A DNA stretch of 60,000 nucleotides, taken from positions 1 through 60,000 of the forward strand of contig NW_021833000.1 of the NCBI RefSeq assembly GCF_006345805.1, in the 5' to 3' direction. The translations under genes and the position numbers were made by a program. The notes under the pieces were generated by a model. It saw only the letters and a program-made list of their open reading frames with translations. It was not told the DNA's origin and made no database searches. Shown here piece after piece: positions 12,188 through 47,830 of the stretch (position 1 is its first letter; the number at the start of each line of letters is the position of its first letter). Origin of the DNA: Octopus sinensis (Eukaryota).

Positions 12188-12946
12188 GGATCTTTTCCTT
12201 TTGAACGGCAGACAATTTCTAGTTAACTAAACACTTTTAAACTTCGTATACTGTTAGAATGTGTCAAAATAAAACATTTTTTTCTCTTGGCTTTCTTGAG
12301 AAAATTGTAATTTGTTTGTTTAACGTAGTTTAATTTTTCGAATTTTAACCAATCCTATGCTCTCTTTTGAGCTAAAATCATTTGCTGCGTCTAAAACTGA
12401 GACAACATCCTGTAACTAACCCTAAACCTCCCCCTAACCCTCACCCAAATTTTTTTTTCTTAATTGTTAAATTAATTTAATTGCTACGTGTGTAAAAAAA
12501 ACTAAACCAATGAAAAATAATTTAACAATTAACAAACAAAATAATTCTATAATTTTATACACACGCTTTCCGTACGTATACGGAAAGCGTGTGTATAAAA
12601 TTATAGAATTATTTCGTTTTAGCCTTCCATTTTTTTTACACGCGTAACAATTAAATTAATTTAACAATTAAGAAAAAAAATTAGGGTGAGGTTTAGGGTT
12701 AGTTACAGGATGTTGTCTCAGTTTTAGACGCAGCAAAAGATTTTAGTTGAATGGAGGTAATCGATTGGTTAAAATTGCCGAAATGCTCGGATTTTCAGAC
12801 GAAATATCTTACAAACTATAGAATTTTCTCAATAAAACCAAGGGGAAATGATGTTTTATAAACACATTCTACAAGTATACGAAGTTTAAAACTTTTTAGT
12901 TACCTAGAAATTATGTTACAAACAGCCGTTCAAAAGGAAAAGATCC
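12188..12946. mobile_element. 759-bp foldback MITE with GGATC termini and exact 8-bp TSD
   Basis: TIR ggatcttttccttttgaacggc / gccgttcaaaaggaaaagatcc. TSD acgacttc at 12180-12187 and 12947-12954. Central palindrome at about 12545-12615. Left end duplicated at 59909-60000. Confidence 0.9.
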
Positions 12947-13170
12947 ACGACTTCTTATCTCTGAGGTTCGACCAAATGGACGAGAACAAAATTACCAGGC
13001 TTTGAAAAATAGGTACTGGGGACGAATTGTTCGACTAGACCCTTTAAGACTGTGCTGCAGCATGGCCGTAGTCTCACCCCAAACCTGAAATGGACTGCCC
13101 CTGCTATATTTAATATATGTAACTCCTACTAAATATGCTGAGTGCCCTTTCTTTCGTTTGACCACTTACT

Positions 13171-13241: not shown

Positions 13242-13415
13242 AAAAAAACTTACTTTTATCCGTCGTGGTCTTATATGCCCCAGAATTAGACTATTTTCTT
13301 TAATCGATACACGGTGATCGTCCATAAGCTTTTTAAGCTTATAATATATTCATTATTATTTGCAGAATTGTCACTCGTCGCCACTTTTCTATTTAACGCA
13401 CATATACATATGTAC

Positions 13416-15434: not shown

Positions 15435-15472
<38 letters not shown>

Positions 15473-15638
15473 TACGACAGGCTTCTTTCAGTTTCCGTCT
15501 ACCAAATCCACTCACAAGGCATTGGTCGGCCCGGGGCTAGAGCAGAAGACACTTGCCCAAGATGCCACGCAGTGGGACTGAACCCGGAACCATGTGGTTG
15601 GTTAGCAAGCTACTTACCACACAGCCACTCCTGCGCCT
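15025..15638 (-). mobile_element. SINE family A, full copy plus tandem 5' partial copy
   Basis: Full copy about 15025-15437 and a second head region about 15470-15638. Confidence 0.85.
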
Positions 15639-16270: not shown

Positions 16271-16697
16271 GGCTCTTTTCGGTTTGAACGGCAGTTTTTC
16301 TAGCGGTGTCATATGAAATTGTCACCCATAATTATGACCCTAGTATCGATCTATTGCATTTCAATCTGTTTTAGGGTTAGGGTTAGTTAGGATTAGGGGT
16401 GGAGGAAGGGTATCTTTTTTTCTTCACAAATGTAAATAAACCCATATCTGTTTCTTAAACGAGGGACATATTCATATGGCACAGAAAGTTATTTACCTCA
16501 ATAGACGTCATTGATTTGTTGAAATTGCAGAAATTGAAGAAAAAAAACCAACAAATATCTTACAAACTATAGAATTTTCTTAATAAAGTCAAGAGAAAAA
16601 GATGTTTTATAAACACATTCTACCAGTATACGAAGTTTAAAAGTGTTTAGTTACGTGGAAATTATGTTAAAAACTGCCGTTCAAACCGAAAAGATCC
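16271..16697. mobile_element. GGATC-terminal MITE, single ~427-bp copy
   Basis: TIRs (gg)ctcttttcggtttgaacggcagtttt / aaaactgccgttcaaaccgaaaagatcc. Internal TTAGGG-like tract. No clear TSD. Confidence 0.85.
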
Positions 16698-18899: not shown

Positions 18900-19564
18900 G
18901 GATCTTTTCGGTTTGAACGGCGGTTTTTTCTAGCGATGTCATATGAAATTGTCACCCATAATTATGACCCTAGTATCGATCTATTGCATTTCAATCTCTT
19001 TTAGGGTAAGGGTTAGGATAGGGGTTAGTTAAGGTTAGGGTTAGTGTGGGGGGAAGGGTATCTTTTTTTCTTCACAAATGTAAATAAATTCAATCTGTTT
19101 CTTAAACGAGGGGCATATTCATACGGCACAGAATGTTGTTTACCTCAATAGACGTCAGTGATTGGTTGAAATTGCAGAAATTGAAGAATAAAAACAACAA
19201 ATATCTTACAAACTATAGAATTTTCTCAATAAAGCCAAGAGAAAAAGATGTTTTATAAACACATTCTACCTTACGTGGAAATTATTTTAAAAAACTGCCG
19301 TTCAAACCGAAAAGATCCCTGTTTCTTAAAACGAGGGACATATTCATACGGCACAGAATGTTATTTATCTCAATAGACGTCATTTATTGGTTGAAATTTC
19401 AGAAATTGAAGAAAAAAAACAAATATCTTACAAACTATAGAATTTTCTCAATAAATCAAGAGAAAAAGATGTTTTATAAACACATCCTACCAGTATACGA
19501 AGTTTAAAAGTGTTTAGTTACGTGGAAATTATGTTAAAAACTGCCGTTCAAAGCGAAAAGATCC
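18900..19564. mobile_element. GGATC MITE with tandem duplication of its terminal ~245 bp
   Basis: Element ends at about 19319, then restarts at tgtttcttaaaacgagggac and runs to a second TIR end at 19564. Confidence 0.85.
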
Positions 19565-22103: not shown

Positions 22104-22350
22104 TAAACATTCAATGATGAGGGAAAGGATGAGAAGTGAATGTTATCGCAGGGTAAGGACAATACTCAAGACAGAGCTGAATGCAAGAAACAGGATCGAA
22201 GCGATCAATGCTTTAGCCATGGCAGCCGTGACTTACAGCTTCAATATCATTAACTGATCAATTACTGAAATATGTAATCTTGACAGAAAAATACGAAAAC
22301 TGTTGACAATGCATAGAATGCACCACCCTAAGGCAGACATAGGACGACTG
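22104..22350 (+). mobile_element. R4/Dong-clade retrotransposon fragment
   Basis: ECYRRVRTILKTELNARNRIEAINALA...YSFNII...LDRKIRKLLTMHRMHHPKADIGRL, adjoining an AAT microsatellite. Confidence 0.75.
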
Positions 22351-22561
22351 TCCACAGTCTGTCTACCCTGTGTGAAAGGCCTCTCCGAAAATATACAAAC
22401 GATATGCGGCCCATATGACACCAGGACAGTATTCAGGAGTAATACAACACTTCGCAAATATCTCCTTCGAGTAAAACCACCAATAGAAGAGAATATGACC
22501 AAAGACTGCGTGTACTCCATCCCATGCAGCTGTGGTAGGTTATACAAAGGCGAAACATACC

Positions 22562-22974
22562 TGTTTCTTTACTACCCACAAGGGGCTAAACACAGAAAGG
22601 ACAAACAAGGACAGACAAACGGATTAAGTCGATTATATCGACCCCAGTGCGTAACTTGTACTTAATTTATCGACCCCGATAGGATGAAAGGCAAAGTCGA
22701 TCTCGGCGGAATTTCAACTCAGAACGTAACGGCAGACGAAATACCTATTTCTTTACTACCCACATGGGGCTAAACACATAGGGGACAAACAAGGACAGAC
22801 AAACGGATTAAGTCGATTACATCGACGGCAGTGCGTAAATGGTACTTAATTTAATCGACCCCGAAAGGATGAAAGGCAAAGTGGACCTTGGCGGAATTTG
22901 GCAGACGAAATACCGCTAAGCATTTCGCCCAGCGTGCTAACGATTCTGGCAGCTCGTCCCCTTTTCTGCCAGCT
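22562..22974 (-). mobile_element. Tandem MetaSINE-like insertion with 10-bp TSD
   Basis: TSD gaaacatacc at 22552-22561 and 22975-22984. Confidence 0.85.
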
Positions 22975-25737: not shown

Positions 25738-26153
25738 GGATCTGTTCGGTTTGATCGGCAGTTTTTTAAAATAATTTCCACGTAACTAAAAAATTTTAAA
25801 CTTCGTATACTTGTAGAATATGTTTATAAAACATCTTTTTCTCTTGGCTTTATTGAGAAAATTCTATAGTTTGTAAGATATTTGTTGTTTTTTTCTTCAA
25901 CTTCTGCAATTTCAAGCGATCAATGACGTCTATTGAGGTGAAAACATTCTGTGCCGTATGAATATGTCTCTCGTTTAAGAAACAGATTGGGTTTATTTAC
26001 ATTTGTGAAGAAAAAAAGATATCCTTCCCTCCACCCCTAACCCTAACCCTAAAACAGATTGAAATGCAATACATCGATACTAGGGTAATAATTATGGGTG
26101 ACAATTTCATATGACACCGCTAGCAAAAACTGCCGTTCAAACTGAAAAGATCC
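25738..26153. mobile_element. GGATC MITE, single copy in opposite orientation
   Basis: Both TIRs present, (CCCTAA) tract at about 26035-26050. Confidence 0.85.
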
Positions 26154-27130: not shown

Positions 27131-27623
27131 TGTTTACGCAACAATATATCCATATGTAGGCGCGTAACGTAGTGGTTAGGACGTTTCACTCATGATCGTA
27201 AGATTGCGGTGTCGAATCCTAGACCAGGCGATGCTTTGTGTTCCTCACCAAAACACTTCATGTCACGTTGCTCCAATTCACGTAGCTAGCAAAAGTGAGA
27301 AATCCTACAACAGACCGGCGTCAGGTTCAAATGAAGACTATATACGCCACAGAATCCGGGAACGGATTTTATGTGCCTATGGCTAGGAAAAGACCTTTCA
27401 TCTTTTTCATATTCATATATAGCCCCTGCATACACTAGGTTCAAAATAAATTCACGTATGTGCCACACACATATGATAAAACTATATACACATACATACT
27501 AACACATATATACTGGTTTCACAATATACGCAGTAAATGTACACATATATATATATATGCACGTGCACATAAATACTTTACACAGAATTGCCTCCCGTAT
27601 TGCTCTTGTACGTTTGAAATCTC

Positions 27624-30391
27624 GGATCTTTTCGTTTTGAACGGCAGTTTTTTTAAAATAATTTCCACGTAACTAAACACTTTTAAACTTCGTATACTGG
27701 TAGAATGTGTTTATAAAACATCTTTTTCTCTTGGCTTTATTGAGAATATTCTATAGTTTGTAAGATATTTGGATCTTTTCGGTTTGACCGGCAGTTTTTT
27801 AAAATAATTTCCACGTAACTAAACACTTTTAAACTTCGTATACTGGTAGAATGTGTTTATAAAACATCTTTTTCTCTTGGCTTTATTGAGAATATTCTAT
27901 AGTTTGTAAGATATTGGGATCTTTTCGGTTTGACCGGCAGTTTTTTAAAATAATTTCCACGTAACTAAACACTTTTAAACTTCGTATACTGGTAGAATGT
28001 GTTTATAAAACATTTTTCTCTTGGCTTTATTGAGAATATTCTATAGTTTGTAAGATATTTGGGATCTTTTCGGTTTGACCGGCAGTTTTTTAAAATAATT
28101 TCCACGTAACTAAACACTTTTAAACTTCGTATACTGTAGAATGTGTTTATAAAACATCTTTTTCTCTTGGCTTTATTGAGAATATTCTATAGTTTGTAAG
28201 ATATTTGGGATCTTTTCGGTTTGACCGGCAGTTTTTTAAAATAATTTCCACGTAACTAAACACTTTTAAACTTCGTATACTGGTAGAATGTGTTTATAAA
28301 ACATCTTTTTCTTGGCTTTATTGAGAATATTCTATAGTTGTAAGATATTTGGGTCTTTTCGGTTTGAACGGCAGTTTTTTAAAATAATTTCCACGTAACT
28401 AAACACTTTTAAACTTCGTATACTGGTAGAATGTGTTTATGAAACATCTTTTTCTCTTGGCTTTATTGAGAATATTCTATAGTTTGTAAGATATTTGGGA
28501 TCTTTTCGGTTTGACCGGCAGTTTTTTAAAATAATTCCACGTAACTAAACACTTTTAAACTTCGTTATACTAGTAGAATGTGTTTATAAAACATTTTTCT
28601 CTTGGCTTTATTGAGAATATTCTATAGTTTGTAAGATATTTGGGTCTTTTCGGTTTGAACGGCAGTTTTTTAAAATAATTTCCACGTAACTAAACACTTT
28701 TAAACTTCGTATACTGGTAGAATGTGTTTATAAAACATCTTTTTCTCTTGGCTTTATTGAGAATATTCTATAGTTTGTAAGATATTTGTTGTTGTTTTTT
28801 CTTCTTCAATTTCTGCAATTTCAACAATCACTGACGTCTGTTGAGGTGAAAACATTCTGTACCGTATGAATATGTCCCTCGTTTAAGAAACAGGGATCTT
28901 TTCGGTTTGAACGGCACTAAATACTTTTAAACTTCGTATACTGGTAGAATGTGTTTATAAAACATCTTTTTCTCTTGGCTTTATTGAGAATATTCTATAG
29001 TTTGAGAATTTGGGATCTTTTCGGTTTGACCGGCAGTTTTTTTAAAAAATTTCCACGTAACTAAACACTTTTAAACTTCGTATACTGGTAGAATGTGTTT
29101 ATAAAACATCTTTTTCTCTTGGCTTTATTGAGAATATTCTATAGTTTGTAAGATATTTGGGATCTTTTCGGTTTGACCGGCAGTTTTTTAAAATAATTTC
29201 CACGTAACTAAACACTTTTAAACTTCGTATACTGGTAGAATGTGTTTATAAAACATCTTTTTCTCTTGGCTTTATTGAGAATATTCTATAGTTTGTAAGA
29301 TATTTGGGATCTTTTCGGTTTGACCGGCAGTTTTTTAAAATAATTTCCACGTAACTAAACACTTTTAAACTTCGTATACTGGTAGAATGTGTTTATAAAA
29401 CATCTTTTTCTCTTGGCTTTATTGAGAATATTCTATAGTTTGTAAGATATTTGGGTCTTTTCGGTTTGAACGGCAGTTTTTTAAAATAATTTCCACGTAA
29501 CTAAACACTTTTAAACTTCGTATACTGGTAGAATGTGTTTATAAAACATCTTTTCTCTTGGCTTTATTGAGAATATTCTATAGTTTGTAAGATATTTGGG
29601 ATCTTTTCGGTTTGACCGGCAGTTTTTTAAAATAATTTCCACGTAACTAAACACTTTTAAACTTCGTATACTAGTAGAATGTGTTTATAAAACATCTTTT
29701 TCTCTTGGCTTTATTGAGAATATTCTATAGTTTGTAAGATATTTGGGTCTTTTCGGTTTGACCGGCAGTTTTTTAAAATAATTTCCACGTAACTAAACAC
29801 TTTTAAACTTCGTATACTGGTAGAATGTGTTTATAAAACATCTTTTTCTCTTGGCTTTATTGAGAATATTCTATAGTTTGTAAGATATTTGTTGTTGTTT
29901 TTTCTTCTTCAATTTCTGCAATTTCAACCAATCACTGACGTCTGTTGAGGTGAAAACATTCTGTACCGTATGAATATGTCCCTCGTTTAAGAAACAGGGA
30001 TCTTTTCGGTTTGAACGGCACTAAATACTTTTAAACTTCGTATACTGGTAGAATGTGTTTATAAAACATCTTTTCTCTTGGCTTTATTGAGAAAATTCTA
30101 TAGTTTGTAACATATTTGTTGTTGTTTTTTTCTTCAACTTCTGCAATTTCAAGCGATCAATGACGTCTATTGAGGTGAAAACATTCTGTGCCGTATGAAT
30201 ATGTCCCTCGTTTAAGAAACAGATTGAGTTTATTTACATTTCTGAAGAAAAAAAGATATCCTTCCCTCCACCCCTAACCCTAACCCTAAAACATATTGAA
30301 ATGCAATAGATCGATACTAGGGTCATAATTATGGGTGACAATTTCATATGACACCGCTAGAAAAAACTGCTGTGCAAAACCGAAAAGATCC
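27624..30391. repeat. MITE-derived satellite array A (~16 TIR-initiated units) inside one MITE
   Basis: ~147-bp units plus two ~252-bp and two deleted units. Flanks gaaatctc (27616-27623) and gaaatccc (30392-30399). Confidence 0.92.
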
Positions 30392-31136
30392 GAAATCCCA
30401 TTTCTTCTGGGTCACTTCCCGTCATTCAACCTCCGTCGTTTTCAGAATGACTTATTACAAACACTTCCTCCTGAATTTACTCCTTCACGCTTCTTACTGC
30501 GGTACGTTTGCTTTCTGGAAAAAAGCTCACCTTTAAATAATTTCCGCTCTGTAATCATTGAGTATTAAACTATTATTTACAGCATATTTTTGCTTTGTCT
30601 TCCGTGTTTTTTTTTTTGTTATTCTTGTAGTTAATGTTGTACCTAGGTCGACGTGTGTACGTGTGTTTAAAGGGGAATAAAAACCCCATTGATGTCTCTA
30701 TCCCTTATACCTAGTAACGTCAGTAATTTGACAAACAGGAATGGGTAAAATGAGTACCAAACGGTAATAATTCCTAACGTTGAAAGCATTCACTAATAAC
30801 CTTAAAGCCTTCATTTCACCCTGGCCACATTTCAAAGACTGAAACCAGTTGTAAAGGGAACTAGTTGCTTCTTTACACTTTTAGGGTGGAACTTGGGTGC
30901 AACACAATTTCCTTTCTTTAGATTCCAGAAACTGCCAGTCATGAACAAGAACGCAACTTAAAAAATATATATATATAACTCTTTATTTTCTTATTTACAA
31001 AAGAAGTTCGTTGGTATCTTGGTATCCACTTGGTGCGAAATAGCAAGGCTGAATTTTAACGTTTGTAAGCTTGTTACAACAAATTCAACAGCAACAGAGC
31101 AGGTCGTCACGGCGCTATTAAGGAAAACGCCCTAGA

Positions 31137-31277
31137 AACTACTGTCCCCTTCAGTCTCTAGCGCATGCGCATGAGGGAACCTCCCTATGCCTTTCCAGAA
31201 GGTTCTAGGAGGTTCCAACCCCGCACATGCGCACTGAAGAAGGACGTTGCGTGTGCGCACACTGGAATATGACGTCA
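31137..31277. promoter_or_regulatory. CpG-containing TATA-less promoter-like motif cluster
   Basis: GCGCATGCGCA (NRF1-type) 31161-31171, two more NRF1-like sites at 31222 and 31248, TGACGTCA (CRE) 31270-31277, AACTACtgTCCC (ZNF143-like) 31137-31148. Confidence 0.5.
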
Positions 31278-31419
31278 CTACACAGTAAAGAGATAACAGA
31301 ACAAAAGAATATATATGGTCGTGGGATCTTTATTAAAAAACTGCCGTTCAAACCGAAAAGATGCTACAAAAAAAATACACGGAATTTTCCAGTCTTTAAT
31401 TTAATAATATTTTACTGAG

Positions 31420-31804
31420 TGGAGGCGCAATGGCCCAGTGGTTAGGGCAGCGGACTCGCGGTCATAGGATCGCGGTTTCGATTCCCAGACCAGGCGTTGT
31501 GAGTGTTTATTGAGCGAAAACACCTAAAGCTCTACGAGTCCCCGGCAGAGGGGATGGTGGTGATCCCTGCTGTACTCTTTCACCACAACTTTCTCTCACT
31601 CTTACTTCCTGTTTCTGTTGTACCTGTATTTCAAAGGGCCGGCCTTGTCACTCTCTGTGTCACGCTGAATATCCCCGAGAACTACGTTAAGGGTACACGT
31701 GTCTGTGGAGTGCTCAGCCACTTACACGTTAATTTCACGAGCAGGCTGTTCCGTTGATTCGGATCAACCGGAACCCTCGTCGTCGCAACCGACGGAGTGC
31801 TTCC
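31420..31804 (+). mobile_element. tRNA-derived SINE family B, full length with 14-bp TSD
   Basis: TSD aatattttactgag at 31406-31419 and 31805-31818. A and B boxes present. Confidence 0.9.
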
Positions 31805-32141
31805 AATATTTTACTGAGCGATATTTTTCGATTTAGCATTGATTTGGATAGAGTTGAAGGAACATATTGCTACAACCGAAGGGATTTGTGGATGTATCAA
31901 ATTATACTAGGGACTTTTAACTTACGACACCGGTGTCGTACGTATTCAGACGGGGGAAACTTCGGTATATGTACCGGTGTAAGTACCGGATACATTTCGA
32001 GAAAGTGTTTTTTTTATATATGGGGGTTAGGGTTAGGTTTAGGGGTGGGATAAAAGGGTTTCTGTTATCTTCAGAAATGTAAACAAAGTCACGTGTGTAC
32101 TTAAACCGAAGGATCGCCAAGTTAAACTTATGGTAGTACTT

Positions 32142-32346
32142 AAGAAGAGTGATCCCGGTGCGCGCACTCGCGTACTCGCGCTAGCTAGTTGTGACTAGTC
32201 GGTCCTACAATGACTACCTAGCAAAGTAAATAAAACAAAACAAATAATTTTTTTAAAACAAAAACACAGAGTAAGGATCGACTAGTCACGACTAGCTAGC
32301 GCGGATGCGTGAGTACGCGAGTGCGCGCACCGGGACCACTCTTCTT
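32142..32346. repeat. 205-bp CpG-rich inverted-repeat element
   Basis: Arms aagaagagtg(a/g)tcccggtgcgcgcactcgcgtactc..., AT-rich centre. Confidence 0.8.
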
Positions 32347-33069
32347 TCTGGGCTGGATATAAATGAAGGAACAATATTGGGAGAACGAAAGGAATTTCTC
32401 AAAGCATTAAATTAGTTTGGGGACTTTTAACAGGCGACACCGGTATCATATTGAGACAGGGGAAATTTACGAGCGACACCGATCACCTTGAATGTTTCTA
32501 ATTAGTTCAGCTTAATTAATAAGATCGTGTGTAATAATTATGTGACGTTGCGGTAAATTTTAATGTTTGTCGATCAGATAAACGTGAGCTACATGTTTCA
32601 GGGTCTCTGTTCCATCGTGATCATCATTAAATATTCCACTTCATCCACAAAGGACATCGTTAATTGGATATTTCCTAATTAACAAAAGCAGGACCAAATG
32701 AACGAATGAACTTTTAATCAACCACAGATGAACGAATCGCTTTCTTCACTTTTTAGTTGACTTTCAAACAGAAACCAATAATTATTTATTGATTAGAAGA
32801 TCGTAACAGAAGAAGACATTGGTTCGCTTTTCCTACAACTCGGAGTGAATGAACAATCCTCATTTATTAAGAAGACTTATTCGTAAGGAGCCTGGCCGGG
32901 TGGAAAAATTGAAGAGGTGTATTACCCCAAAAAGAGACTAAAAATGTAAAAAGTGAGAGGATTATTACCTCGTGTTTGTGTTTTATTTTTAATTTTGAAC
33001 TGTGTAAGAGGTTTATTGCCTCATTGTGTTTTTTTTTTAAAAAGGGAAAAAAGAATAATGTTTTAGAGA

Positions 33070-33231
33070 AGCGAAGGTCGGCGGGCGCTTTTCGTCTTCT
33101 CCCATCCTTATCATCCTTGCATCATCATCATCATTCATCCCATTAATGTCTCTGTCTAGCCCTCAAGCTTCTCATTTAATGAAATAAAGAAGACGATACG
33201 TGAATTTGGCTCCCGTGAATTACAGAAATCG
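33070..33231 (+). other. Candidate non-coding first exon of the zinc-finger gene
   Basis: GC-richer segment ending at donor G|GTGAGT (33232). Candidate acceptor tttag at 35528 upstream of the ATG. Exon start is a guess. Confidence 0.35.
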
Positions 33232-33369
33232 GTGAGTAAATTCTTTGAAACAGGTAAATCATATTCTAGAAATACTCTCTTAAATGTTATGCAAAATATA
33301 AAACGATAATTAACTCGGGGTGTGACTAATTACAAAAGGCCAAAATGATAATTAAGTCACACCTATACT

Positions 33370-33788
33370 CTCTCTTTACTCTTTTTACTTGTTTCAGTCA
33401 TTTGACTGCGGCAATGTAGGAGCACCGCCTTTAGTCGAGCAAATCTATCCCAGGACATATTCTTTCGAAGCCTAGTACTTATTCTATCGGTCTCTTTTGA
33501 CAAATCGCTAAGTTACGGGGAGGTAAATACACCAGCATCGGTTGTCAAGCGATGTAGGGGTGGGCAAACACAGACGCACAAACATATACACACACATACA
33601 TACATATATACATATACATATATACGACGCGCTTCTTTCAGTTTCCGTCTACCAAATCCACTCACAAGGCTTTGGTCGGTCTGAGGCAATAGTAGAAGAC
33701 ACTTGCCCAATGTGCCACACGGTGGAACTGAACCCGGAACCATGTGGTTAGTAAGCAAGCTACTTACCAGACAGCCACTTCTACGCCT
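33370..33788 (-). mobile_element. SINE family A, full length, diverged
   Basis: Colinear with 11560-11975. Another partial copy at about 34290-34548. Confidence 0.85.
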
Positions 33789-34851
33789 ATATATATATTT
33801 TTTTTTTAATCACCACCACCCCTTAAAATTTTTTACTTTTTTGAAATATTCTCCTCTGTTTTAGATAACGGAGATTCCGAATGTGCAAGAAACCACGTTT
33901 TCAAAATTTTTAATTCAATAAGTATATAGATGTGTGTACAGGTAGATATGAAAGTCTTCCTGGGGCTAAAAACAACAGTAACACTGCCTTCTATAGGCCC
34001 ACCACATTCAGTTGACAAATATATTTTATGAATAAACGGACAGGGATAAATAGACAGACAGATAAATAAATGGATGAAAAAGTTCAAAATTAAAATTGAG
34101 GGAGGGGTGAATTCTTTTTTTTTTTTTTTTTTGATATTCGTAATCTCCGACATCTAAAACGTAGGAATCTGAAAAAATTTTTTTCGAAAAAATACATTTT
34201 TAAGAAGTGTGAAACTGCATTAGACCCTGAATTCCTGTTTTCAATATCGGAGACTACGATTTTGTCAACAGAGCACATTCTTTATAAGGCTAGTTCTTAT
34301 TCTATCTGCCTCTTTTGCTAAACCGCTAAGTTACGGTGACGTAAACACACCAACATTGATTATCAAGGGATAGTAGGGTATACAAACACAAACACAAATA
34401 TATACATATACGACGGGCTTCTTTCAGTTTCCTTTTACTAAATCCACTCACAAGGCTTTGGTCGGGCCGAGGCTATAGTAGAAGACACTTGCCCAAGGTG
34501 CCACACAGTGGGACTGAACCCCGAACCATGTGGTTGGTAAGCAAGCTTCTTAATATTTGCAATGTTAAATTATTTTGTCGTTTAACGATTCTTTTTATCT
34601 TACTGCTTCTTTTTTCTTATTTCAGAATATCACATCATGTTGACATAAAAGAAATTTCTTCATTCGGATGTGCCTTCGATATTCCTCACCAACTTTCATC
34701 ATTTAAAGGAAGACGATATTTTTATAAGGAGCATTCATCAATACATCAACCTCTTTACAAAAATATAATCTATAACAAACAACGGCAAAATATTTTTCTT
34801 GTCTTCCCTCACTGGAATGTAGAAGAGAAGATTGCCTTACATGTTGATTAA

Positions 34852-35474
34852 CCCTTTTGATACCAACCCAGCTGAAACCACCCCTGGCTCTGTAGTATAA
34901 ATGTCTTGTTTTCATTAGTTTTTCATTAGAATATGCCACCAAACCTTAGTTGCAATTTATGTTCCTAACACTAGCTTAATGATAACTAAGTTATTTTACT
35001 AAATTCATTATTATATCTTTATATATAAAAGTAAGGTTATGTGCTGTCTGTCTCCTACGATTTAGATTCCTAACTACTCCCACATTTTGCGGTGCAGTTT
35101 AACCAAAACCGGGTATCTTATAGTCGTGATTCATATCGAGCCCTTCTGGATATTAGCACGCGTCTACGAGGAGTCTACGATTTTAAAAATAATTTACCAT
35201 TAATTTCTCCCATTTTTAATGCACTTTTGGCATATATAAGGGAAGTAACTCTCTAAAAATTTATTATTAAATCTCAGATCGTAAAAAGCTATAGTAACAC
35301 CACCCCCCCCCGCTTGTGGTTAGCCATATTGAGATGGCTATTATACTTTACATCTCTAAAAATGCTTATATAGTTATTTCCCTTACAAACCCGAGCAACG
35401 CCGGGCGATGCTGCTAGTTTTAAATAATTGAAAGAAACACAGAGCATCTCAAAATAAATACAGTAACGAAAGGG
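34852..35474. mobile_element. piggyBac-type non-autonomous element (TTAA TSD) hosting a Helitron
   Basis: TTAA|cccttttgatac ... gtaacgaaaggg|TTAA. Confidence 0.7.
35016..35417 (+). mobile_element. Non-autonomous Helitron
   Basis: A|TC start, subterminal hairpin cccgagcaacgccggg, CTAG|T end. Confidence 0.8.
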
Positions 35475-35668
35475 TTAAGCTTGGATAAACTTTACAAAAG
35501 AGTTGACAGTTTTCACCTGTTGATTTAGGTATGAAGTAAGATCACAAATGAAAGAAGCATAGCATTAAATTATTCTCTGAAAATAGTGATCCAACTTCAT
35601 ACAAACATATTCATAGAAATGAAAAAATCATTATCATTGTGATACGTATAATTAATTATTCTCTCATA

Positions 35669-36475
35669 ATGGATAATATAATTGAACCAAAAAACCCTGA
35701 TACCAGAGATAAGCCACATTCCTGCGATATCTGTGGTAAGTCATTCTCTCATAGTACTAACTTAACTAGACACAAGCGTACACATACAGGTGAAAAGCCA
35801 TACCATTGCGATATCTGTGGTAAATCATTCCCTGAAGCTGGTCAGTTGAAAACACACAAACGTATGCATACAGGTGAAAAGCCGTATCATTGTAATATCT
35901 GTGGTAAATCATTTGTTTCTGTTAGTCATGTCACTAATCACAAACGTATTCATACAGGTGAGAAGCCATATCATTGTGATACCTGTGGTAAATCATTCAC
36001 ACAAAACAGTCATTTGACTAAACCCAAACTTATTCATACAGGTGAGAAGCCACATCACTGTGGTATTTGCGGAAAATCATTCTCTCGTTATGATAAATTG
36101 AATCCTCACAAACGCACTCATACAGGTGAGAAGCCTCATCATTGTGATATCTGTGATAAATCATTCTCTGAAAGTAGCCTCTTGACTCGTCACATACGAA
36201 TTCATACAGGTGAGAAACCATATCAATGTGATATCTGTGGTACATCATTCTCTCAAAATGGTTATTTCGCTAAGCACAAACGCATTCATACAGGAGAGAA
36301 GCCATATCATTGTGATATCTGTGGTAAATCATTTTCTCAAAATAGCACTTTAACTAGTCACAAATGCATTCATACAGGTGAGAAGCCATATACCTGTGAT
36401 ATCTGTGGTAAATCATTCTCTCAACTGAGTGCCTTAAATAAACACAAACAGACACATACAGGTGAAAAGCCATAA
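35669..36475 (+). CDS. C2H2 zinc-finger protein, 9 tandem fingers (268 aa), cephalopod expanded-family type
   Basis: Nine CxxC-x12-HxxxH units with TGEKP linkers. Finger 4 has His replaced by Pro. ATG at 35669; upstream GTG start not used. Confidence 0.9.
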   Translation: MDNIIEPKNPDTRDKPHSCDICGKSFSHSTNLTRHKRTHTGEKPYHCDICGKSFPEAGQLKTHKRMHTGEKPYHCNICGKSFVSVSHVTNHKRIHTGEKPYHCDTCGKSFTQNSHLTKPKLIHTGEKPHHCGICGKSFSRYDKLNPHKRTHTGEKPHHCDICDKSFSESSLLTRHIRIHTGEKPYQCDICGTSFSQNGYFAKHKRIHTGEKPYHCDICGKSFSQNSTLTSHKCIHTGEKPYTCDICGKSFSQLSALNKHKQTHTGEKP

Positions 36476-36479
36476 TCTG

Positions 36480-36997
36480 GCGTCATCATCATCATCGTTT
36501 AATGTCCGTTTTCCATGCTGGCATGGGTTGGACGGTTCAACTGGGGTCTGCGAAGCCAGAAGGCTGCGCCAGGCCCAGTCTGATCTAAGTTAAGTTAATT
36601 ATTTGGCTCAAAAAGCAAAAAGCAAGGCCATGTAGGGGGACATGGAGTTATGTACAGAGTGGTGTTCATACAAAGAGTTCAGGCCATTTCTGGTCAAGAG
36701 AGACTTTGAACCGAGCGGTCGTCGGCATCTTCACTATCTCGTCTGGCAGCTTATTCCACGGATCCGCAACCCGGACGGAGAAAGCCCCTTTCCTTCGATT
36801 GAGATGAAATTGTCGCAGATAGAGCTTTTCGGAGTGACCCCCGCAGCCGACGCTCTGGAGTGTTTCTACAGCTGGATGCCCTCCCTAACACCTACCACTC
36901 CGTAAGTGTAGTGGGTGCTTTTTACGTGCCACCTGCACCGGTGCCAGGCGAGGCTGGCAAGCGGCCACGATCGGATGGTGCTTTTTACGTGCCACCA
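36480..36997 (-). mobile_element. RTE-related non-autonomous element with (ATG)n tail (family E) at the end of the ZNF ORF
   Basis: catcatcatcgtttaa...gcatgggttggacgg...ggatgccct. Flanks gccata(a)tctg / gccatatctg. Confidence 0.75.
36587..36853 (-). mobile_element. CR1/L2-type LINE 3' end nested in the family E element
   Basis: GHSEKLYLRQFHLNRRKGAFSVRVADPWNKLPDEIVKMPTTARFKVSLDQKWPELFV* and a (TTAAC)-like tail. Confidence 0.85.
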
Positions 36998-37000
36998 GCC

Positions 37001-37145
37001 ATATCTGTGGTAAATCATTTTCTCATAGACATAACTTAAATGTCCATGAATGAATTCCTACATAAGAGAAGCCATGTCAGTATGACACATGTGGCAAATC
37101 ATTCTATCGAAAACGCCACATGCATGAACATGTGGGTATCCAAAA
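37001..37145 (+). pseudogene. Degenerate continuation of the zinc-finger array (about 2 decayed fingers)
   Basis: ICGKSFSHRHNLNVHE*IPT*EKPCQYDTCGKSFYRK with in-frame stops, same nucleotide motif as the intact fingers. Confidence 0.75.
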
Positions 37146-37204
37146 ACAAATATAACTGTATCAATGTCAACATTTAACACATGACATCAGCTAAGACTAT
37201 TTTG

Positions 37205-40200
37205 GGATCTTTTCTGTTTGAACGGCAGTTTTTTCTAGGGGTGTCATATGAAATTGTCACCCATAATTATGACCCTAGTATCGATCTATTGCATTTCAAT
37301 CTGTCTCAGGGTTAGTGGTGGGGGGAAGGGTATCTTTTTTTTTTCTTCAGAAATGTAAATAAAACTCAATCTGTTTCTTAAACGAGGAACATATTCATAC
37401 GGCACAGAATGTTTTCACCTCAATAGACGTCACTGATTGGTTGAAATTGCAGAAATTGAAGAAAAAAAACAACAAATATCTTACAAACTATAGAATTTTC
37501 TCAATAAAGCCAAGAGAAAAAGATGTTTTATAAACACATTCTACCAGTATACGAAGTTTAAAAGTGTTTAGTTACGTGGAAATTATTTTAAAAAACTGCC
37601 GTTCAAACCGAGAAGACCCAAATATCTTACAAACTATAGGATTTTCTCAATAAAGCCAAGAGAAAAAGATGTTTTATAAACACATTCTACCAGTATACGA
37701 AGTTTAAAAGTGTTTAGTTACGTGGAAATTATTTTAAAAAACTGCCGTTCAAACCGAAAAGACCCAAATATCTTATAAACTATAGGATTTTCTCAATAAA
37801 GCCAAGAGAAAAAGATGTTTTATAAACACATTCTACCAGTATACGAAGTTTAAAAGTGTTTAGTTACGTGGAAATTATTTTAAAAAGCTGCCGTTCAAAC
37901 CGAAAAGACCCAAATATCTTACAAACTATAGAATTTTCTCAATAAAGCCAAGAGAAAAAGATGTCTTATAAACATATTCTACCAGTAATCGAAGTTTAAA
38001 AGTGTTTAGTTACGTGGAAATTATTTTAAAAAACTGCCGTTCAAACCGAAAAGACTCAAATATCTTACAAACTATAGAATATTCTCAATAAAACCAAGAG
38101 AAAAAGATGTTTTATAAACATATTCTACCAGTAATCGAAGTTTAAAAGTGTTTAGTTACGTGGAAATTATTTTAAAAAGCTGCCGTTCAAACCGAAAAGA
38201 CCCAAATATCTTACAAACTATAGAATTTTCTCAATAAAGCCAAGAGAAAAAGATGTTTTATAAACATATTCTACCAGTGATCGAAGTTTAAAAGTGTTTA
38301 GTTACGTGGAAATTATTTTAAAAAACTGCCGTTCAAACCGAAAAGACCCAAATATCTTACAAACTATAGAATTTTCTCAATAAAGCCAAGAGAAAAAGAT
38401 GTTTTATAAACATATTCTACCAGTAATCGAAGTTTAAAAGTGTTTAGTTACGTGGAAATTATTTTAAAAAGCTGCCGTTCAAACCGAAAAGACCCAAATA
38501 TCTTACAAACTATAGAATTTTCTCATAAAGCCAAGAGAAAAAGATGTTTTATAAACATATTCTACCAGTGATCGAAGTTTAAAAGTGTTTAGTTACGTGG
38601 AAATTATTTTAAAAAACTGCCGTTCAAACCGAAAAGACCAAATATCTTACAAACTATAGAATTTTCACAATAAAGCCAAGAGAAAAAGATGTTTTATAAA
38701 CATATTCTACCAGTATCGAAGTTTAAAAGTGTTTAGTTACGTGGAAATTATTTTAAAAAACTGCCGTTCAAACCGAGAAGACCCAAATATCTTACAAACT
38801 ATAGAATTTTCTCAATAAAGCCAAGAGAAAAAGATGTTTTATAAACATATTCTACCAGTAATCGAAGTTTAAAAGTGTTTAGTTACGTGGAAATTATTTT
38901 AAAAAACTGCCGTTCAAACCGAAAAGATCCCAAATATCTTACAACTATAGAATTTTCTCAATAAAGCCAAGAGAAAAAGATGTTTTATAAACATATTCTA
39001 CCAGTATCGAAGTTTAAAAGTGTTTAGTTACGTGGAAATTATTTTAAAAAACTGCCGTTCAAACCGAAAAGATCCCTGTTTCATAAACGAGGGACATATT
39101 CATACGGCACACAATGAATTTTTACCTCAATAGACGTCATTGATTGGTTGAAATTGCAGAAATTGAAGAAAAAAAACAACAAATATCTTACAAACTATAG
39201 AATTTTCTCAATAAAGCCAAGAGAAAAAGATGTTTTATAAACAAATTCTACCAGTATACGAAGTTTAAATGTGTTAGTTACGTGGAAATTATTTTAAAAA
39301 ACTGCCGTTCAAACCGAAAAGATCCCTGTTCATAAACGAGGGACATATTCATACGGCCACAATGCATTTTTACCTCAATAGACGTCATTGATTGGTTGAA
39401 ATTGCAGAAATTGAAGAAAAAAAACAACAAATATCTTACAAACTATAGAATTTTCTCAATAAAGCCAAGAGAAAAAGATGTTTTATAAACAAATTCTACC
39501 AGTATACGAAGTTTAAATGTGTTAGTTACGTGGAAATTATTTTAAAAAACTGCCGTTCAAACCGAAAAGATCCCTGTTTCATAAACGAGGGACATATTCA
39601 TACGGCACACAATGCATTTTTACCTCAATAGACGTCATTGATTGGTTGAAATTGCAGAAATTGAAGAAAAAAAAACAACAAATATCTTACAAACTATAGA
39701 ATTTTCTCAATAAAGCCAAGAGAAAAAGATGTTTTATAAACAAATTCTACCAGTATACGAAGTTTAAATGTGTTTAGTTACGTGGAAATTATTTTAAAAA
39801 ACTGCCGTTCAAACCGAAAAGATCCCTGTTTCATAAACGAGGGACATATTCATACGGCACACAATGCATTTTTACCTCAATAGACGTCATTGATTGGTTG
39901 AAATTGCAGAAATTGAAGAAAAAAACAACAAATATCTTACAAACTATAGAATTTTCTCAATAAAGCCAAGAGAAAAAGATGTTTTATAAACAAATTCTAC
40001 CAGTATACGAAGTTTAAATGTGTTTAGTTACGTGGAAATATTTTAAAAAACTGCCGTTCAAACCGAAAAGATCCCTGTTTCATAAACAAGGGACATATTC
40101 ATACGGCACACAATGCATTTTTACCTCAATAGACGTCATTGATTGTTGAAATTGCAGAAATTGAAGAAAAAAAACAACAAATATCTTACAAACTATAGAA

Positions 40201-40824
40201 TTTTCTCAATAAAGCCAAGAGAAAAAGATGTTTTATAAACAAATTCTACCAGTATACGAAGTTTAAATGTGTTTAGTTACGTGGAAATTATTTTAAAAAA
40301 CTGCCGTTCAAACCGAAAAGATCCCTGTTCATAAACGAGGGACATATTCATACGGCACACAATGCATTTTTACCTCAATAGACGTCATTGATTGGTTGAA
40401 ATTGCAGAAATTGAAGAAAAAAAACAACAAATATCTTACAAACTATAGAATTTTCTCAATAAAGCCAAGAGAAAAAGATGTTTTATAAACAAATTCTACC
40501 AGTATACGAAGTTTAAATGTGTTTAGTTACGTGGAAATATTTTAAAAAACTGCCGTTCAAACCGAAAAGATCCCTGTTTCATAAACAAGGGACATATTCA
40601 TACGGCACACAATGCATTTTTACCTCAATAGACGTCATTGATTGGTTGAAATTGCAGAAATTGAGAAAAAAAAAAAACAAATATCTTACAAACTATAGAA
40701 TTTTCTCAATAAAGCCAAGAGAAAAAGATGTTTTATAAACACATTCTACCAGTATACGAAGTTTAAATGTGTTTAGTTACGTGGAAATTATTTTAAAAAA
40801 CTACCGTTCAAACCGAAAAGATCC
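37205..40824. repeat. MITE-derived satellite array B: full MITE + ~10 x 146-bp + 7 x 250-bp terminal units
   Basis: Every unit ends at the TIR tip. Exact 8-bp TSD ctattttg at 37197-37204 and 40825-40832. Confidence 0.93.
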
Positions 40825-41089
40825 CTATTTTGTCTGCTAAAAGACAATTTTTTTCCCTTCAACTTCAATATCGTCAATGTGAATCTGAAATTTGTCATTA
40901 TCTGTAAAAATATTGACTCTGAGATAACTTCATCACTGAAAATGCCTGCAGTTGGATTTTGAGGAATTTGTCAAAAAAGAATAATGAATGAAATGTTAAA
41001 CTGTAACCATTCTGTGTTTGTTTTGTTACTCTGTATCTAGACTCTGTCCCTTCTATCCCTTAAATCTCTCAACTGGTACAGTTACACCC

Positions 41090-42877: not shown

Positions 42878-43660
42878 TCATCATCATTCATCATTGTTCG
42901 ACCGTGGTCGAGACAATGGAATTTACCGTGCTGCGCCAGACTTCACGGTCCATCATAGCATTACGGAGGTCCTGTTGCTGGATGCCTGTATCCCTGGAGA
43001 TTACATCAGGACAGGAGAGTGTGCGCCCTCTGGTATCGCGACCGTGGTCGAGACAATGGGATTTCCCATGCTACGCCAGACTTCACGTCCATCATGGCAT
43101 TACGGTGGTCCTGTTGCTGGATACCTGTATCCCTGGAGATTACATCAGAGTAGGAGAGTGTGCGCACTCTGGTATCGCGACCGTGGTCGAGACAATGGAA
43201 TTTCCCATGCTACGCCAGACTTCACGTCCATCATGGCATTACGGTGGTCCAGTGGCTGGATACCTGTATCCCTGGAGATTACATCAGAGTAGGAGAGTGT
43301 GCGCACTCTGGTATCGCGACCGTGGTCGAGACAATGGAATTTACCATGCTACGCCAGACTTCACGGTCCATCATGGCATTACGGAGGTCCTGTTGCTGGA
43401 TGCCTGTATCCCTGGAGATTACATCTGGGTAGGAGAGTGTGCACCCTCTAGTATTGCGAGCAGGTGGCTTCCAAAGGAGAAGAGAAGAAATTGCCTCGTT
43501 TTCAGCTCTACAACAATGTCCAGCAAACTGGACTCTCCTACCTTTCACAAGAGATGACACAGGTGGTAGTTTCCCATATATTTGTACTTTGGTTGGATGA
43601 CGCTTCCACGAGAGATTTTGCGCTCTCATGAGGAGGCGAGTGTAGGTTCCATCCAACCGC
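42878..43660 (-). mobile_element. RTE/RTEX-like LINE 3' end with its last 139 bp in four tandem copies
   Basis: DGTYTRLLMRAQNLSW...RRVQFAGHC...LLLWKP...DREVWR. Units at 42899, 43039, 43178, 43317. (ATG)n tail at 42878. Confidence 0.85.
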
Positions 43661-46929: not shown

Positions 46930-47830
46930 AGTTTGGGGAGAGTCATTCTTTTTGTAACCTTATAATTTAACACACTCACCGGTAAAATTTCCACTTATTT
47001 CTTATTTTTTATTTTCCTAAAATTTTCGTTGCGTCTTGCAACCTTTTCCATAGTTTTGACTCTGTCGGATATTTACACTGTGTTCCTTTTTGTTTGTTTG
47101 TGCTCATGTGTGTGGGGCAGTGTGTGTATGTATGTATATGTATGTATGTATGTATAAACAGACAAATATGGAGACAAGGATCCACACATATAAAGATGCA
47201 CATCCATACATACAAACATGGTACGTAGTTGCATAACACACACACACAGACATGCACACACCAGGAGACAGAGGTGTATACATATCCAGACACACGCTTA
47301 CACACACACATACATAGGAAATACACAAACACAGACATGCAAGCACATAAATATGCAGGATACATACAGATACATACACCTACATACATATATACATATG
47401 CATACACAAACATATATACATACACATTCAAACACATATACATACATACATATAAATATATACATCCATACATATATACATACATACATACAGACAGACA
47501 GACAGACATACACACATGGATGCATGTATAGGAACACACACTGGCCCACACACAAAAAAGCAAAAGGGAACGCATCCTAAATAACGGACAGAATCAGGAC
47601 TATTGAAAAGGTTGCAAGACGAAACGAAAACTTTAGGAAAATAAAAATAAGAAATAAGTGTAAATTTTACCAGTGATTGTGTTATGGAGCATAAAAAGAC
47701 AATCACTCTCCCCAGACAACAACAGAATATGCTTCAACACACGAACTCACATAAAGAATCTTGCAAACCAAATCCAAAAACGAAATACTCCAAGTTTGTT
47801 TAGAAAAAATCTTGCTTGTGTCTTACACTT
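46930..47830. repeat. Inverted pair of an unclassified microsatellite-associated repeat
   Basis: Core gcaagacgcaacgaaaattttaggaaaataaaaataagaaataagtgg on minus at about 46930-47070 and plus at about 47590-47800. Also at 3755-3945 and 1-110. Confidence 0.7.

What the first reader, a model, noticed from the sequence alone, without database searches (positions are those of the whole stretch)
37197..40832. 3.6-kb satellite built from MITE ends and enclosed by a single 8-bp TSD
Seen: one full MITE, then about 10 copies of its last ~146 bp and 7 copies of its last ~250 bp. Each unit ends exactly at the TIR tip, and ctattttg flanks the whole array. Inference: satellite DNA is being generated inside a transposon, either after insertion or in a composite that jumped as one unit. 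Boundaries at the TIR tip suggest transposase-linked amplification rather than random slippage.
Basis: partly seen in the sequence, partly recalled or inferred. Interest (0 to 1): 0.75.

Follow-up and report, generated by a model that had tools for sequence, protein, structure and literature searches.

The report
Transposon-end tandem array inside one insertion
A small non-coding transposon (MITE) in this animal genome carries 17 tandem copies of its own right-hand end inside a single insertion site, and a second such array lies nearby, so this is a clean but not unprecedented example of satellite-like DNA arising from, and probably moving with, a transposon.

Summary
Window 37205-40824 holds one full 414-bp MITE, then 10 units of ~146 bp (MITE positions 269-415), then 7 units of ~250 bp (positions 167-415). 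Every unit ends at the right TIR tip. The whole array is flanked by a perfect 8-bp duplication, CTATTTTG.

New findings:
- A second array (27624-30391, minus strand) has the same two junctions and its own 8-bp duplication (7/8 match).
- A MITE plus one 250-bp unit lies at 18900-19564.
- A foldback relative has a perfect 8-bp duplication.

Both junction types join the exact tip to an internal site with no filler and no microhomology. This points to transposase strand transfer into a copy of the same element as the founding event.

Copy-number growth looks recombinational instead. Only two junction types exist, variants are specific to each array, and higher-order periodicities are present, including a 7-unit block duplication.

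Shared junctions at sites with different target duplications suggest that composites move as units. Gene conversion between the neighbouring arrays is not excluded.

The TIR starts with GG and the duplication is 8 bp, which fits Merlin better than hAT. No transposase and no external copy was found, and the organism is unidentified. This is a known kind of event (transposon-derived satellite) with an unusually clean architecture.

The parts
37197..37204 (.). Left copy of the 8-bp target-site duplication CTATTTTG of array E
   Evidence: Read directly. Abuts the left TIR tip GGATC at 37205.
37205..37618 (+). E00: full-length MITE (414 bp) with left TIR GGATCTTTTCTGTTTGAACGGCAGTTTTTT. Its right TIR tip carries the 1-nt deletion (GA-CC).
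   Evidence: It is 82-91% identical to the other full copies in the window.
37619..39075 (+). E01-E10: ten tandem units of 144-147 bp, each equal to MITE positions 269-415, starting CAAATATC and ending at the right TIR tip
   Evidence: Neighbour gradient and dimer pattern.
39076..40824 (+). E11-E17: seven tandem units of 248-252 bp, each equal to MITE positions 167-415, starting CTGTTTC and ending at an intact tip GATCC
   Evidence: Differences are lowest at lags 2 and 4, matching TRF period 499.
40825..40832 (.). Right copy of the TSD CTATTTTG of array E
   Evidence: Directly follows the last tip GATCC (40820-40824).
27616..27623 (.). TSD copy of array D (GAAATCTC on the + strand)
   Evidence: Matches 30392-30399 at 7 of 8 positions.
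27624..30391 (-). Array D. In element orientation: full MITE D00 (30391-29998, 394 bp, with a 26-bp deletion), 250-bp unit D01 (29997-29746), five 147-bp units D02-D06 (29745-29013), 119-bp unit D07 with the same 26-bp deletion (29012-28894), 250-bp unit D08 (28893-28643), seven ~146-bp units D09-D15 (28642-27624). The junctions are the same as in array E.
   Evidence: The 7-unit block duplication is shown by the lag-7 minimum and by the self-match 27818-29004 vs 28916-30107 at 98.1%.
30392..30399 (.). Second TSD copy of array D (GAAATCCC)
18900..19564 (+). Locus B: full MITE (18900-19318) followed directly by one 246-bp unit (19319-19564), with the same tip|CTGTTTC junction. No recognisable TSD.
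16271..16697 (+). Solo MITE copy A (427 bp), no clear TSD
25738..26153 (-). Solo MITE copy C (416 bp), no clear TSD. It is the closest relative of the head of array D.
12180..12954 (.). Foldback-like relative (element 12188-12946, 759 bp) whose two arms are both right-end type. It is flanked by a perfect 8-bp TSD ACGACTTC (12180-12187 and 12947-12954).
31324..31364 (+). 41-bp remnant made of about 8 nt of the left tip joined to about 33 nt of the right TIR. It is an internally deleted derivative.

Best explanation
This is a non-autonomous cut-and-paste DNA transposon (a ~415-bp MITE with a 30-bp TIR starting 5'-GG and an 8-bp TSD, most like the Merlin superfamily). Its 3' portion, including the complete right TIR, has been reiterated in tandem. 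The proposed history has four steps.

(1) Inferred: on two occasions a transposase-cut right tip was joined by strand transfer to a target site inside a copy of the same element, at position 167 and at position 269. This happened either as a same-orientation nested insertion later resolved by homologous recombination, or in one step by a sister-chromatid ('alternative') transposition. Either route gives 'full MITE + 3' partial unit' with the tip abutting internal sequence.

(2) Shown: these two junctions were then multiplied by unequal exchange between units. The result is arrays with dimeric and multi-unit higher-order repeats and array-specific variants.

(3) Inferred from shared junctions at sites with different TSDs: composites with one left end and several right ends were themselves mobilised. 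The transposase would pair the left end with a distal right end, seeding arrays at new nearby sites (D, E and the dimer B).

(4) Shown: arrays kept expanding in situ after insertion.

The product is a dispersed, potentially mobile seed of satellite DNA in which every monomer keeps a transposase-binding end.
For: Architecture and TSDs are shown. Three independent 8-bp TSDs were found: CTATTTTG 8/8, GAAATC[T/C]C 7/8 and ACGACTTC 8/8.

Junctions: all 33 unit junctions in arrays E and D and in locus B are either tip|CAAATATC (position 269) or tip|CTGTTTC (position 167). There is no filler. The bases preceding positions 167 and 269 in the full element (..CAAT..ACAA) share nothing with the tip (..ATCC), so there is no microhomology, as expected for strand transfer and not for slippage or MMEJ.

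Recombinational growth: variants are array-specific and sub-array-specific. In the E 250-bp units, differences are lowest at lags 2 and 4. In D they are lowest at lag 7 (mean 3.3 against 4.2-5.5 at other lags), and a 1.2-kb self-match at 98.1% supports this. D07 carries the same 26-bp deletion as the head D00.

Common descent of units across loci: D and E share both junctions plus the 1-nt tip deletion. The right parts of E00/E01 differ from those of D01/D03/D08/D10 by only 2-3 of 147 positions, yet the flanks and TSDs differ and the flanks share no similarity.

Precedent: alternative transposition of Ac makes tandem direct duplications whose endpoints coincide precisely with the transposon termini (PMC3744419). 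Merlin elements have TIRs starting GG and 8-9-bp TSDs (PMC8101967).
Against: No transposase or autonomous partner was found in the window, and none could be searched for in the genome. No nested-insertion intermediate is present.

Only one 60-kb window is available. All external searches for further copies were empty, so genome-wide generality is untested.

The left arms of the two array heads differ by about 8% (14/166), while some right parts differ by 1.4-2%. This fits gene conversion between the two neighbouring arrays as well as it fits composite transposition.

The solo copies A and C and the dimer B lack recognisable TSDs. The resemblance of the unit-start 8-mers to the known TSDs is inconclusive. 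Copy numbers rest on an unverified assembly that also contains a 99.5%-identical 12-kb duplication.
Confidence: 0.55

Rival explanations
1. Spread by local recombination only. Solo MITEs inserted at the D and E sites, giving each its own TSD. Units were later copied into them from a pre-existing neighbouring array by ectopic gene conversion or break repair. Composites never transposed as units.
For: D and E lie only 6.8 kb apart in inverted orientation. The left arms of their heads differ by about 8%, while class-I right parts differ by 2-3 of 147 positions. The head of D (D00) resembles the nearby solo copy C rather than its own units. The tip deletion is the only derived character the two arrays share.
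Against: Locus B, about 8-10 kb from D, also has the 250-bp junction but is about 13% diverged. This implies an old junction present at several sites. Unit order differs between D and E, and most variants are array-specific, so any conversion tracts would have to be old and then re-amplified. The rival still needs one original array whose junctions sit at the tip.
Confidence: 0.2
2. Recurrent independent formation. The transposase has a strong target preference for positions 167 and 269 of its own element, so the same junctions arise anew at each locus.
For: The 8-mer at position 269 (CAAATATC) ranks in the top ~2-4% of all MITE 8-mers for similarity to the three observed TSDs. B01 and B00 belong to different sequence subtypes, as expected if two different copies were joined.
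Against: The 8-mer at position 167 is unremarkable (top 22-32%). The three TSDs show no strong consensus. No nested full-length insertion is seen among about 9 elements. The 1-nt tip deletion shared by D and E is better explained by descent.
Confidence: 0.1
3. Circle and rolling-circle origin. Intramolecular strand transfer (autointegration) of the right tip into position 269 or 167 excised 147-bp or 250-bp circles. These were amplified by rolling-circle replication into concatemers, which re-entered a MITE by homologous recombination. This is true transposase-linked amplification.
For: It explains the exact tip-to-internal junctions and many identical junctions in one step. Rolling-circle models are discussed for some TE-derived arrays (PMC5932611; PMC12628747).
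Against: Higher-order structure, the neighbour gradient and the 7-unit block duplication show stepwise unequal exchange. A single burst would not give that pattern. Two unit types sit side by side in one array. There is no direct evidence for circles.
Confidence: 0.08
4. Assembly artefact or a non-transposase accident. Copy number is inflated or mis-joined by the assembler, or the junctions arose by slippage or end-joining that happened to fall at the tip.
For: The window contains a 12-kb segment repeated at 99.0-99.5% identity, which may be an assembly duplication. Many 1-nt indels among units could be long-read errors.
Against: Units differ by patterned, shared substitutions and indels that form higher-order repeats. 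Two separate arrays and a diverged dimer carry the same junctions. The chance that two junction types both hit the exact tip is about 6e-6 (my calculation). There is no microhomology and no filler.
Confidence: 0.07

Closest known systems
Xmix MITE / Xstir tandem repeats of Xenopus laevis (Hikosaka & Kawahara 2004, as summarised in PMC12628747 and PMC9659126)
   Same: The same repeat occurs as a solo MITE, as a tandem array, and as a composite of MITE plus array. The monomers derive from the MITE itself, and the reviews list the TIR region as the source.
   Different: The mechanism proposed there is stem-loop formation between two nearby elements followed by nuclease trimming. Here the junction joins an intact right tip to internal sequence with no left TIR and no trimming, which that model does not predict. 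I could not read the original paper, so a unit-level comparison is untested.
Tandem-repeat-containing MITEs of bivalves (DTC84 of Donax trunculus, pearl/CvA of oysters; PMC3879986) and miDNA4 of Xenopus tropicalis
   Same: These are MITEs that carry a variable number of about 150-bp tandem repeats and are thought to spread satellite seeds around the genome.
   Different: In those elements the repeats are an internal core flanked by two unique arms. Here the repeated unit includes the 3' terminus itself. The element therefore has one left end and up to 18 right ends, with no unique right arm.
TE tandem dimers and the hobo array formed by double insertion (McGurk & Barbash 2018, PMC5932611)
   Same: In both cases transposition creates the first tandem junction, and unequal exchange then expands it. 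Their example is hobo at about 16 copies, with a single junction type throughout.
   Different: Their dimers are whole elements head-to-tail, with a TSD-length 8-nt spacer between the two TIRs.
Alternative transposition of maize Ac/Ds (reversed-ends and sister-chromatid transposition; PMC3744419, PMC4270019)
   Same: These are tandem direct duplications whose endpoints coincide precisely with a transposon terminus, made directly by transposase and carrying 8-bp TSD signatures.
   Different: Those are hAT elements, the duplications span kilobases to megabases of flanking DNA, and they were observed experimentally. Here the duplicated segment lies inside the element, the superfamily is probably Merlin, and the mechanism is inferred only.
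Tetris foldback transposon of Drosophila virilis (PMC4079207) and the hAT-MITE tandem accumulations at Atlantic cod inversion breakpoints (PMC12368964)
   Same: In both, terminal parts of a DNA transposon, or MITE copies, are arranged in tandem and give rise to satellite-like arrays. In cod, inverted arrays are linked to rearrangements.
   Different: In Tetris the repeats are internal to long TIRs. The cod arrays are described as tandem insertions of MITEs. Neither has nested 147-bp and 250-bp units that share one end within a single TSD.

Membership tests
MITE (non-autonomous TIR DNA transposon) | Terminal inverted repeats | tested here: met
   The 30-bp TIR is GGATCTTTTCGGTTTGAACGGCAGTTTTTT. 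It has 41 matches at 3 or fewer mismatches in the window, against 0 in shuffles.
MITE (non-autonomous TIR DNA transposon) | Target-site duplication of fixed length | tested here: met
   The TSD is 8 bp at three loci: 8/8, 8/8 and 7/8 matches. Three older copies show none.
MITE (non-autonomous TIR DNA transposon) | Small size, no coding capacity, multiple copies | tested here: met
   The element is 394-428 bp. Its ORFs are 56 aa or shorter and have no homologues. The 60-kb window holds 5 full copies, 2 arrays and several fragments.
Merlin superfamily | 8- or 9-bp TSD | tested here: met
   The criterion is taken from PMC8101967.
Merlin superfamily | TIR (24-462 bp) beginning with 5'-GG | tested here: met
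   Both tips read GGATC. The foldback relative has arms of several hundred bp.
Merlin superfamily | Autonomous partner encoding a DDE_Tnp_IS1595 transposase with matching TIRs | not testable with these tools
   None of 18 ORFs of 110 aa or more scanned against Pfam has such a domain.
hAT superfamily | 8-bp TSD | tested here: met
hAT superfamily | Short TIRs with the terminal motif 5'-YARNG (from my own knowledge of the family) | tested here: not met
   The tips read GGATC.
Satellite DNA (classical) | Head-to-tail monomers with concerted evolution or higher-order repeats | tested here: met
Satellite DNA (classical) | Long arrays and high genomic abundance | not testable with these tools
   Only arrays of 3.6 kb and 2.8 kb are visible in one window. 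No external copies were found.
Tandem-repeat-containing MITEs (pearl / DTC84 / miDNA4 type) | Internal repeat core flanked by two non-repeated arms, each carrying a terminal inverted repeat | tested here: not met
   The repeated unit contains the right TIR itself. There is no unique right arm.
Double-insertion TE dimers (McGurk & Barbash) | Complete elements head-to-tail with a TSD-length spacer between the right and left TIRs | tested here: not met
   There is no left TIR between units and no spacer. The tip abuts position 167 or 269.
Alternative-transposition duplications (Ac/Ds type) | Duplication endpoint exactly at a transposon terminus | tested here: met
   All 33 junctions lie at the tip.
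Alternative-transposition duplications (Ac/Ds type) | Reciprocal product or matching TSD at the other breakpoint, and dependence on active transposase | not testable with these tools
   This would need population or experimental data.

The most novel reading that the evidence does not exclude
A Merlin-type transposase both creates and disperses satellite DNA. Its tip-to-internal strand transfer (autointegration or sister-chromatid transposition) makes 147-bp and 250-bp units, possibly through circles amplified by rolling-circle replication. Because every monomer keeps a functional right end, arrays of any length stay mobile and can seed new arrays. They could also act as multi-ended substrates for rearrangements. 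One example would be the two head-to-head arrays bracketing the 6.8-kb zinc-finger segment, which might behave as a macro-transposon or an inversion substrate.
Probability: 0.15. Interest if true: 0.7.

Novelty: new member of a known kind. Interest (0 to 1): 0.42.

Why it matters
How new satellite DNAs are born and how they reach many chromosomal sites is still argued mostly from old, degraded examples. Here the whole record is legible in one window:
- the parent MITE;
- two founding junctions at the exact transposase cleavage point;
- intact target-site duplications around whole arrays;
- a dimer stage;
- higher-order expansion.

If the pattern holds genome-wide, it would show that one transposition-type reaction seeds the repeat, recombination expands it, and transposition then spreads ready-made arrays. 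It would also provide a natural multi-ended substrate for testing alternative transposition outside hAT and P elements. On present evidence it is a clean new example of a known process, not a new process.

Tried and rejected
1. More copies from public data. Exact look-ups of array-encoded ORFs found nothing. A 397-aa concatenate of six-frame MITE peptides had no hit in the 5.8-billion-protein database. TIR and arm k-mers were absent from JGI metagenome, GTDB genome and IMG/VR contigs; the pattern had a wrong spacer and was repeated correctly. No paper prints the TIR sequence.

2. Organism identification. The C2H2 zinc-finger ORF matched animals of every phylum at about 55%. A LINE-tail ORF matched only unnamed ENA metagenome contigs. 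The long contigs fetched (ERZ25072740) contain neither the MITE nor any window-like DNA. The best hit is a 576-bp contig. A cephalopod origin is only a suspicion from memory and was not used as evidence.

3. Paralogous empty site. No such site was found in the window for either array.

4. Target hot-spot test. Comparison of the unit-start 8-mers with the three TSDs was inconclusive.

5. Microhomology or filler at the junctions. None was found, so slippage, MMEJ and the Xstir stem-loop trimming model were rejected for the founding junctions.

6. Pseudo-left-end idea. Positions 167 and 269 do not resemble the TIR, so the units are not shorter MITEs with their own left end.

7. Segmental duplication of one array into the other. 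This was rejected because the flanks share no similarity and the TSDs differ.

8. Rfam and tRNA scans found nothing in the arrays.
Full report
**Observation**

TRF reports a 146-bp repeat of 11.0 copies at 37473-39072 (97% matches) and a 250-bp repeat of 7.6 copies at 38931-40830 (98% matches). I used 37205-37620 as a blastn query and parsed units at each right-TIR core. This gives three parts:
- E00, a full element of 414 bp at 37205-37618;
- E01-E10, ten units of 144-147 bp at 37619-39075, each equal to element positions 269-415;
- E11-E17, seven units of 248-252 bp at 39076-40824, each equal to positions 167-415.

CTATTTTG lies at 37197-37204 against the left tip GGATC, and again at 40825-40832 against the last right tip GATCC. 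With the window's base composition, an 8/8 match at fixed positions has a probability of about 3e-5 (my calculation).

**The element**

The element is about 415 bp long. It has a 30-bp terminal inverted repeat, GGATCTTTTCGGTTTGAACGGCAGTTTTTT. This has 41 matches at 3 or fewer mismatches in the window, against none in 100 shuffles. Its ORFs are no longer than 56 codons and have no database homologues. The left arm contains a (TTAGGG)-like run of variable length.

The window holds further copies:
- solo copies at 16271-16697 (A) and 25738-26153 (C);
- a 41-bp internally deleted remnant at 31324-31364;
- a 759-bp foldback-like relative at 12188-12946, whose two arms are both of the right-end type, flanked by a perfect 8-bp duplication ACGACTTC.

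The family therefore makes 8-bp target duplications and behaves as a MITE.

**The array is not unique**

A second array lies on the minus strand at 27624-30391. In element orientation it reads as follows:
- a full copy D00 (394 bp, with a 26-bp deletion);
- one 250-bp unit;
- five 147-bp units;
- a 119-bp unit carrying the same 26-bp deletion;
- another 250-bp unit;
- seven units of about 146 bp.

It is flanked by GAAATCTC and GAAATCCC, a 7/8 match, with a chance of about 6e-4 by my calculation. At 18900-19564 a diverged full copy is followed directly by a single 246-bp unit.

All 33 junctions at the three loci are of only two kinds: right tip followed by CTGTTTC (position 167), or right tip followed by CAAATATC (position 269). 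Each array has one left end and many right ends.

**What the junctions say**

The tip is defined independently by the left TIR and by three target duplications. In both junction types the complete tip (...AAAAGATCC) abuts internal sequence with no extra bases. In the full element the bases preceding positions 167 and 269 are ...CAAT and ...ACAA. These share nothing with the tip, so there is no microhomology.

A random duplication breakpoint would hit the tip with a probability of about 1/415. For two independent junction types the joint probability is about 6e-6 (my calculation). This is the expected signature of a 3'-OH at a transposase-cut end attacking target DNA. It is not the signature of slippage, of microhomology-mediated joining, or of the stem-loop trimming proposed for Xstir.

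Two routes give exactly this product:
- a same-orientation insertion of one copy into another, followed by recombination between the duplicated left parts;
- a single sister-chromatid or 'alternative' transposition, in which the right end of one chromatid's copy integrates into the sister copy.

Maize Ac is known to produce tandem direct duplications whose endpoints coincide precisely with the element terminus (PMC3744419). The sequence cannot distinguish the two routes. The first 8 nt of each unit would be the target of that event. CAAATATC ranks in the top 2-4% of element 8-mers for resemblance to the three observed target duplications, but CTGTTTCT does not. This test is inconclusive.

**How the arrays grew**

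Repeated transposase action would create new junction positions each time, yet only two exist. The variant pattern instead indicates unequal exchange:
- Substitutions and indels are specific to each array, and within E to the 147-bp and 250-bp blocks.
- The E 250-bp units are most alike at lags 2 and 4, matching TRF's 499-bp period. The E 147-bp units show a neighbour gradient with alternating variants.
- Array D is a duplicated 7-unit block. The lag-7 mean is 3.3 differences against 4.2-5.5 at other lags. There is a 1.2-kb self-match at 98.1%. Unit D07 carries the head's 26-bp deletion.

Amplification is therefore recombinational, and much of it happened after the two array lineages separated.

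**Did composites move?**

D and E have different target duplications and unrelated flanks, so neither is a segmental copy of the other. Even so they share both junctions and a 1-nt deletion in the tip (GA-CC). This deletion is present in E00-E08 and in D01, D03, D08 and D10. The right parts of E00/E01 differ from those D units at only 2-3 of 147 positions. Locus B carries the 250-bp junction in a much older copy (86.6% identity to D00+D01).

The simplest reading is that 'MITE + 250 + 147' composites predate these insertions. They would have been mobilised as units using the left end and a distal right end, and then expanded locally.

The main caveat is that the left arms of D00 and E00 differ by about 8% (14/166), and D00 resembles the adjacent solo copy C. 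Gene conversion between the two neighbouring inverted arrays, or replacement of the array heads, could also explain the shared units. I give composite mobility about even odds and local conversion about one in five.

**Superfamily**

An 8-bp duplication fits both hAT and Merlin. The tips read GGATC and not the YARNG typical of hAT (my knowledge of that family). Merlin elements are defined by TIRs of 24-462 bp starting with GG and by 8-9-bp duplications (PMC8101967). The foldback relative, with arms of several hundred bp, also fits that range.

No transposase is present in the window. None of 18 ORFs of 110 aa or more scanned against Pfam has a DDE_Tnp_IS1595 or hAT domain. Merlin is therefore a lead, not a classification.

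**Comparison with known cases**

Satellite DNA derived from MITEs and from TIR regions is well documented (reviews PMC12628747 and PMC9659126).
- Xmix/Xstir of Xenopus is the closest case. It has MITE, array and composite forms, and its monomers come from the TIR region.
- Bivalve tandem-repeat-containing MITEs (DTC84, pearl) and miDNA4 carry an internal repeat core between two arms. Here the repeat includes the terminus itself, so that architecture is not met.
- The double-insertion dimers of McGurk and Barbash are whole elements separated by an 8-nt target duplication. That is also not met. Their two-stage logic does apply: transposition makes the first tandem junction and unequal exchange expands it.

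I found no description of this repeat, and no paper prints its TIR.

**Limits**

The organism was not identified. No further copies could be retrieved from any public collection reachable here. Genome-wide abundance, other junction types, the target logo and empty sites are all untested.

Copy numbers depend on an assembly that also contains a 12.3-kb segment repeated 47.7 kb away at 99.0-99.5% identity. The patterned variation among units argues that the arrays are real, but exact counts need long reads.

**Verdict**

The feature is real and was correctly described. The founding junctions look transposase-made, the amplification looks recombinational, and both in-situ growth and probable movement of composites contributed. 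It is a new and unusually legible member of a known class (transposon-derived, possibly mobile satellite seeds) and is of moderate interest.

Noticed in passing
window 2-12279 and 47689-60000: The first 12.3 kb of the window recurs 47.7 kb downstream at 99.0-99.5% identity in direct orientation. It is either a recent large tandem segmental duplication or a haplotype/assembly duplication. The MITE arrays lie in the unique stretch between the two copies.
   Followed up: partly
window 12180-12954: A 759-bp foldback-like relative of the MITE. Both arms are right-end type, the central palindrome lies near 12580, and the element is flanked by a perfect 8-bp TSD ACGACTTC. Its left end recurs at 59909-59998 in the duplicated segment.
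   Followed up: partly
window 31324-31364: A 41-bp remnant made of about 8 nt of the left tip fused to about 33 nt of the right TIR. It looks like an internal-deletion derivative from abortive gap repair, which hints that the family excises.
   Followed up: no
window 16821-17744; 15253-15638; 42899-43459: Other tandem arrays built from interspersed-repeat sequence: 184 bp x 5, 201 bp x 1.9 and 139 bp x 4. Conversion of dispersed repeats into short tandem arrays therefore seems common in this genome and is not limited to the MITE.
   Followed up: no
window 35639-37110: An ORF with nine C2H2 zinc fingers at 35639-36475 (TRF period 84). Decayed finger repeats continue to about 37110, so array E is inserted in the degenerate tail of a zinc-finger array.
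   Followed up: partly
window 27624-40824: Arrays D (minus strand) and E (plus strand) are head-to-head, with their left ends facing each other across 6.8 kb that contains the zinc-finger ORF. The outermost right ends are in inverted orientation. This is a potential macro-transposon or an inversion substrate.
   Followed up: no
window 18990-19045 and the equivalent position in other copies: The MITE left arm contains a (TTAGGG)-like run whose length varies between copies. It is longest in copy B and shortest in E00.
   Followed up: no
window 16271-16697, 18900-19564, 25738-26153: The two solo copies and the dimer have no recognisable 8-bp TSD, although both arrays and the foldback element do. 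This remains unexplained. It could reflect age, or exchange of flanks by ectopic recombination.
   Followed up: partly
window 19980-20772, 22303-22665, 9503-9835, 43279-43656: Fragments of retroelement ORFs. One has a weak GIY-YIG match below Pfam's cut-off. A LINE-tail ORF has 60-90% identical relatives, but only in unnamed ENA metagenome contigs.
   Followed up: partly
window 13170-13242: A tRNA-Leu(CAA)-like sequence found by both Rfam and ARAGORN. It may be a real tRNA gene or the head of a SINE.
   Followed up: no
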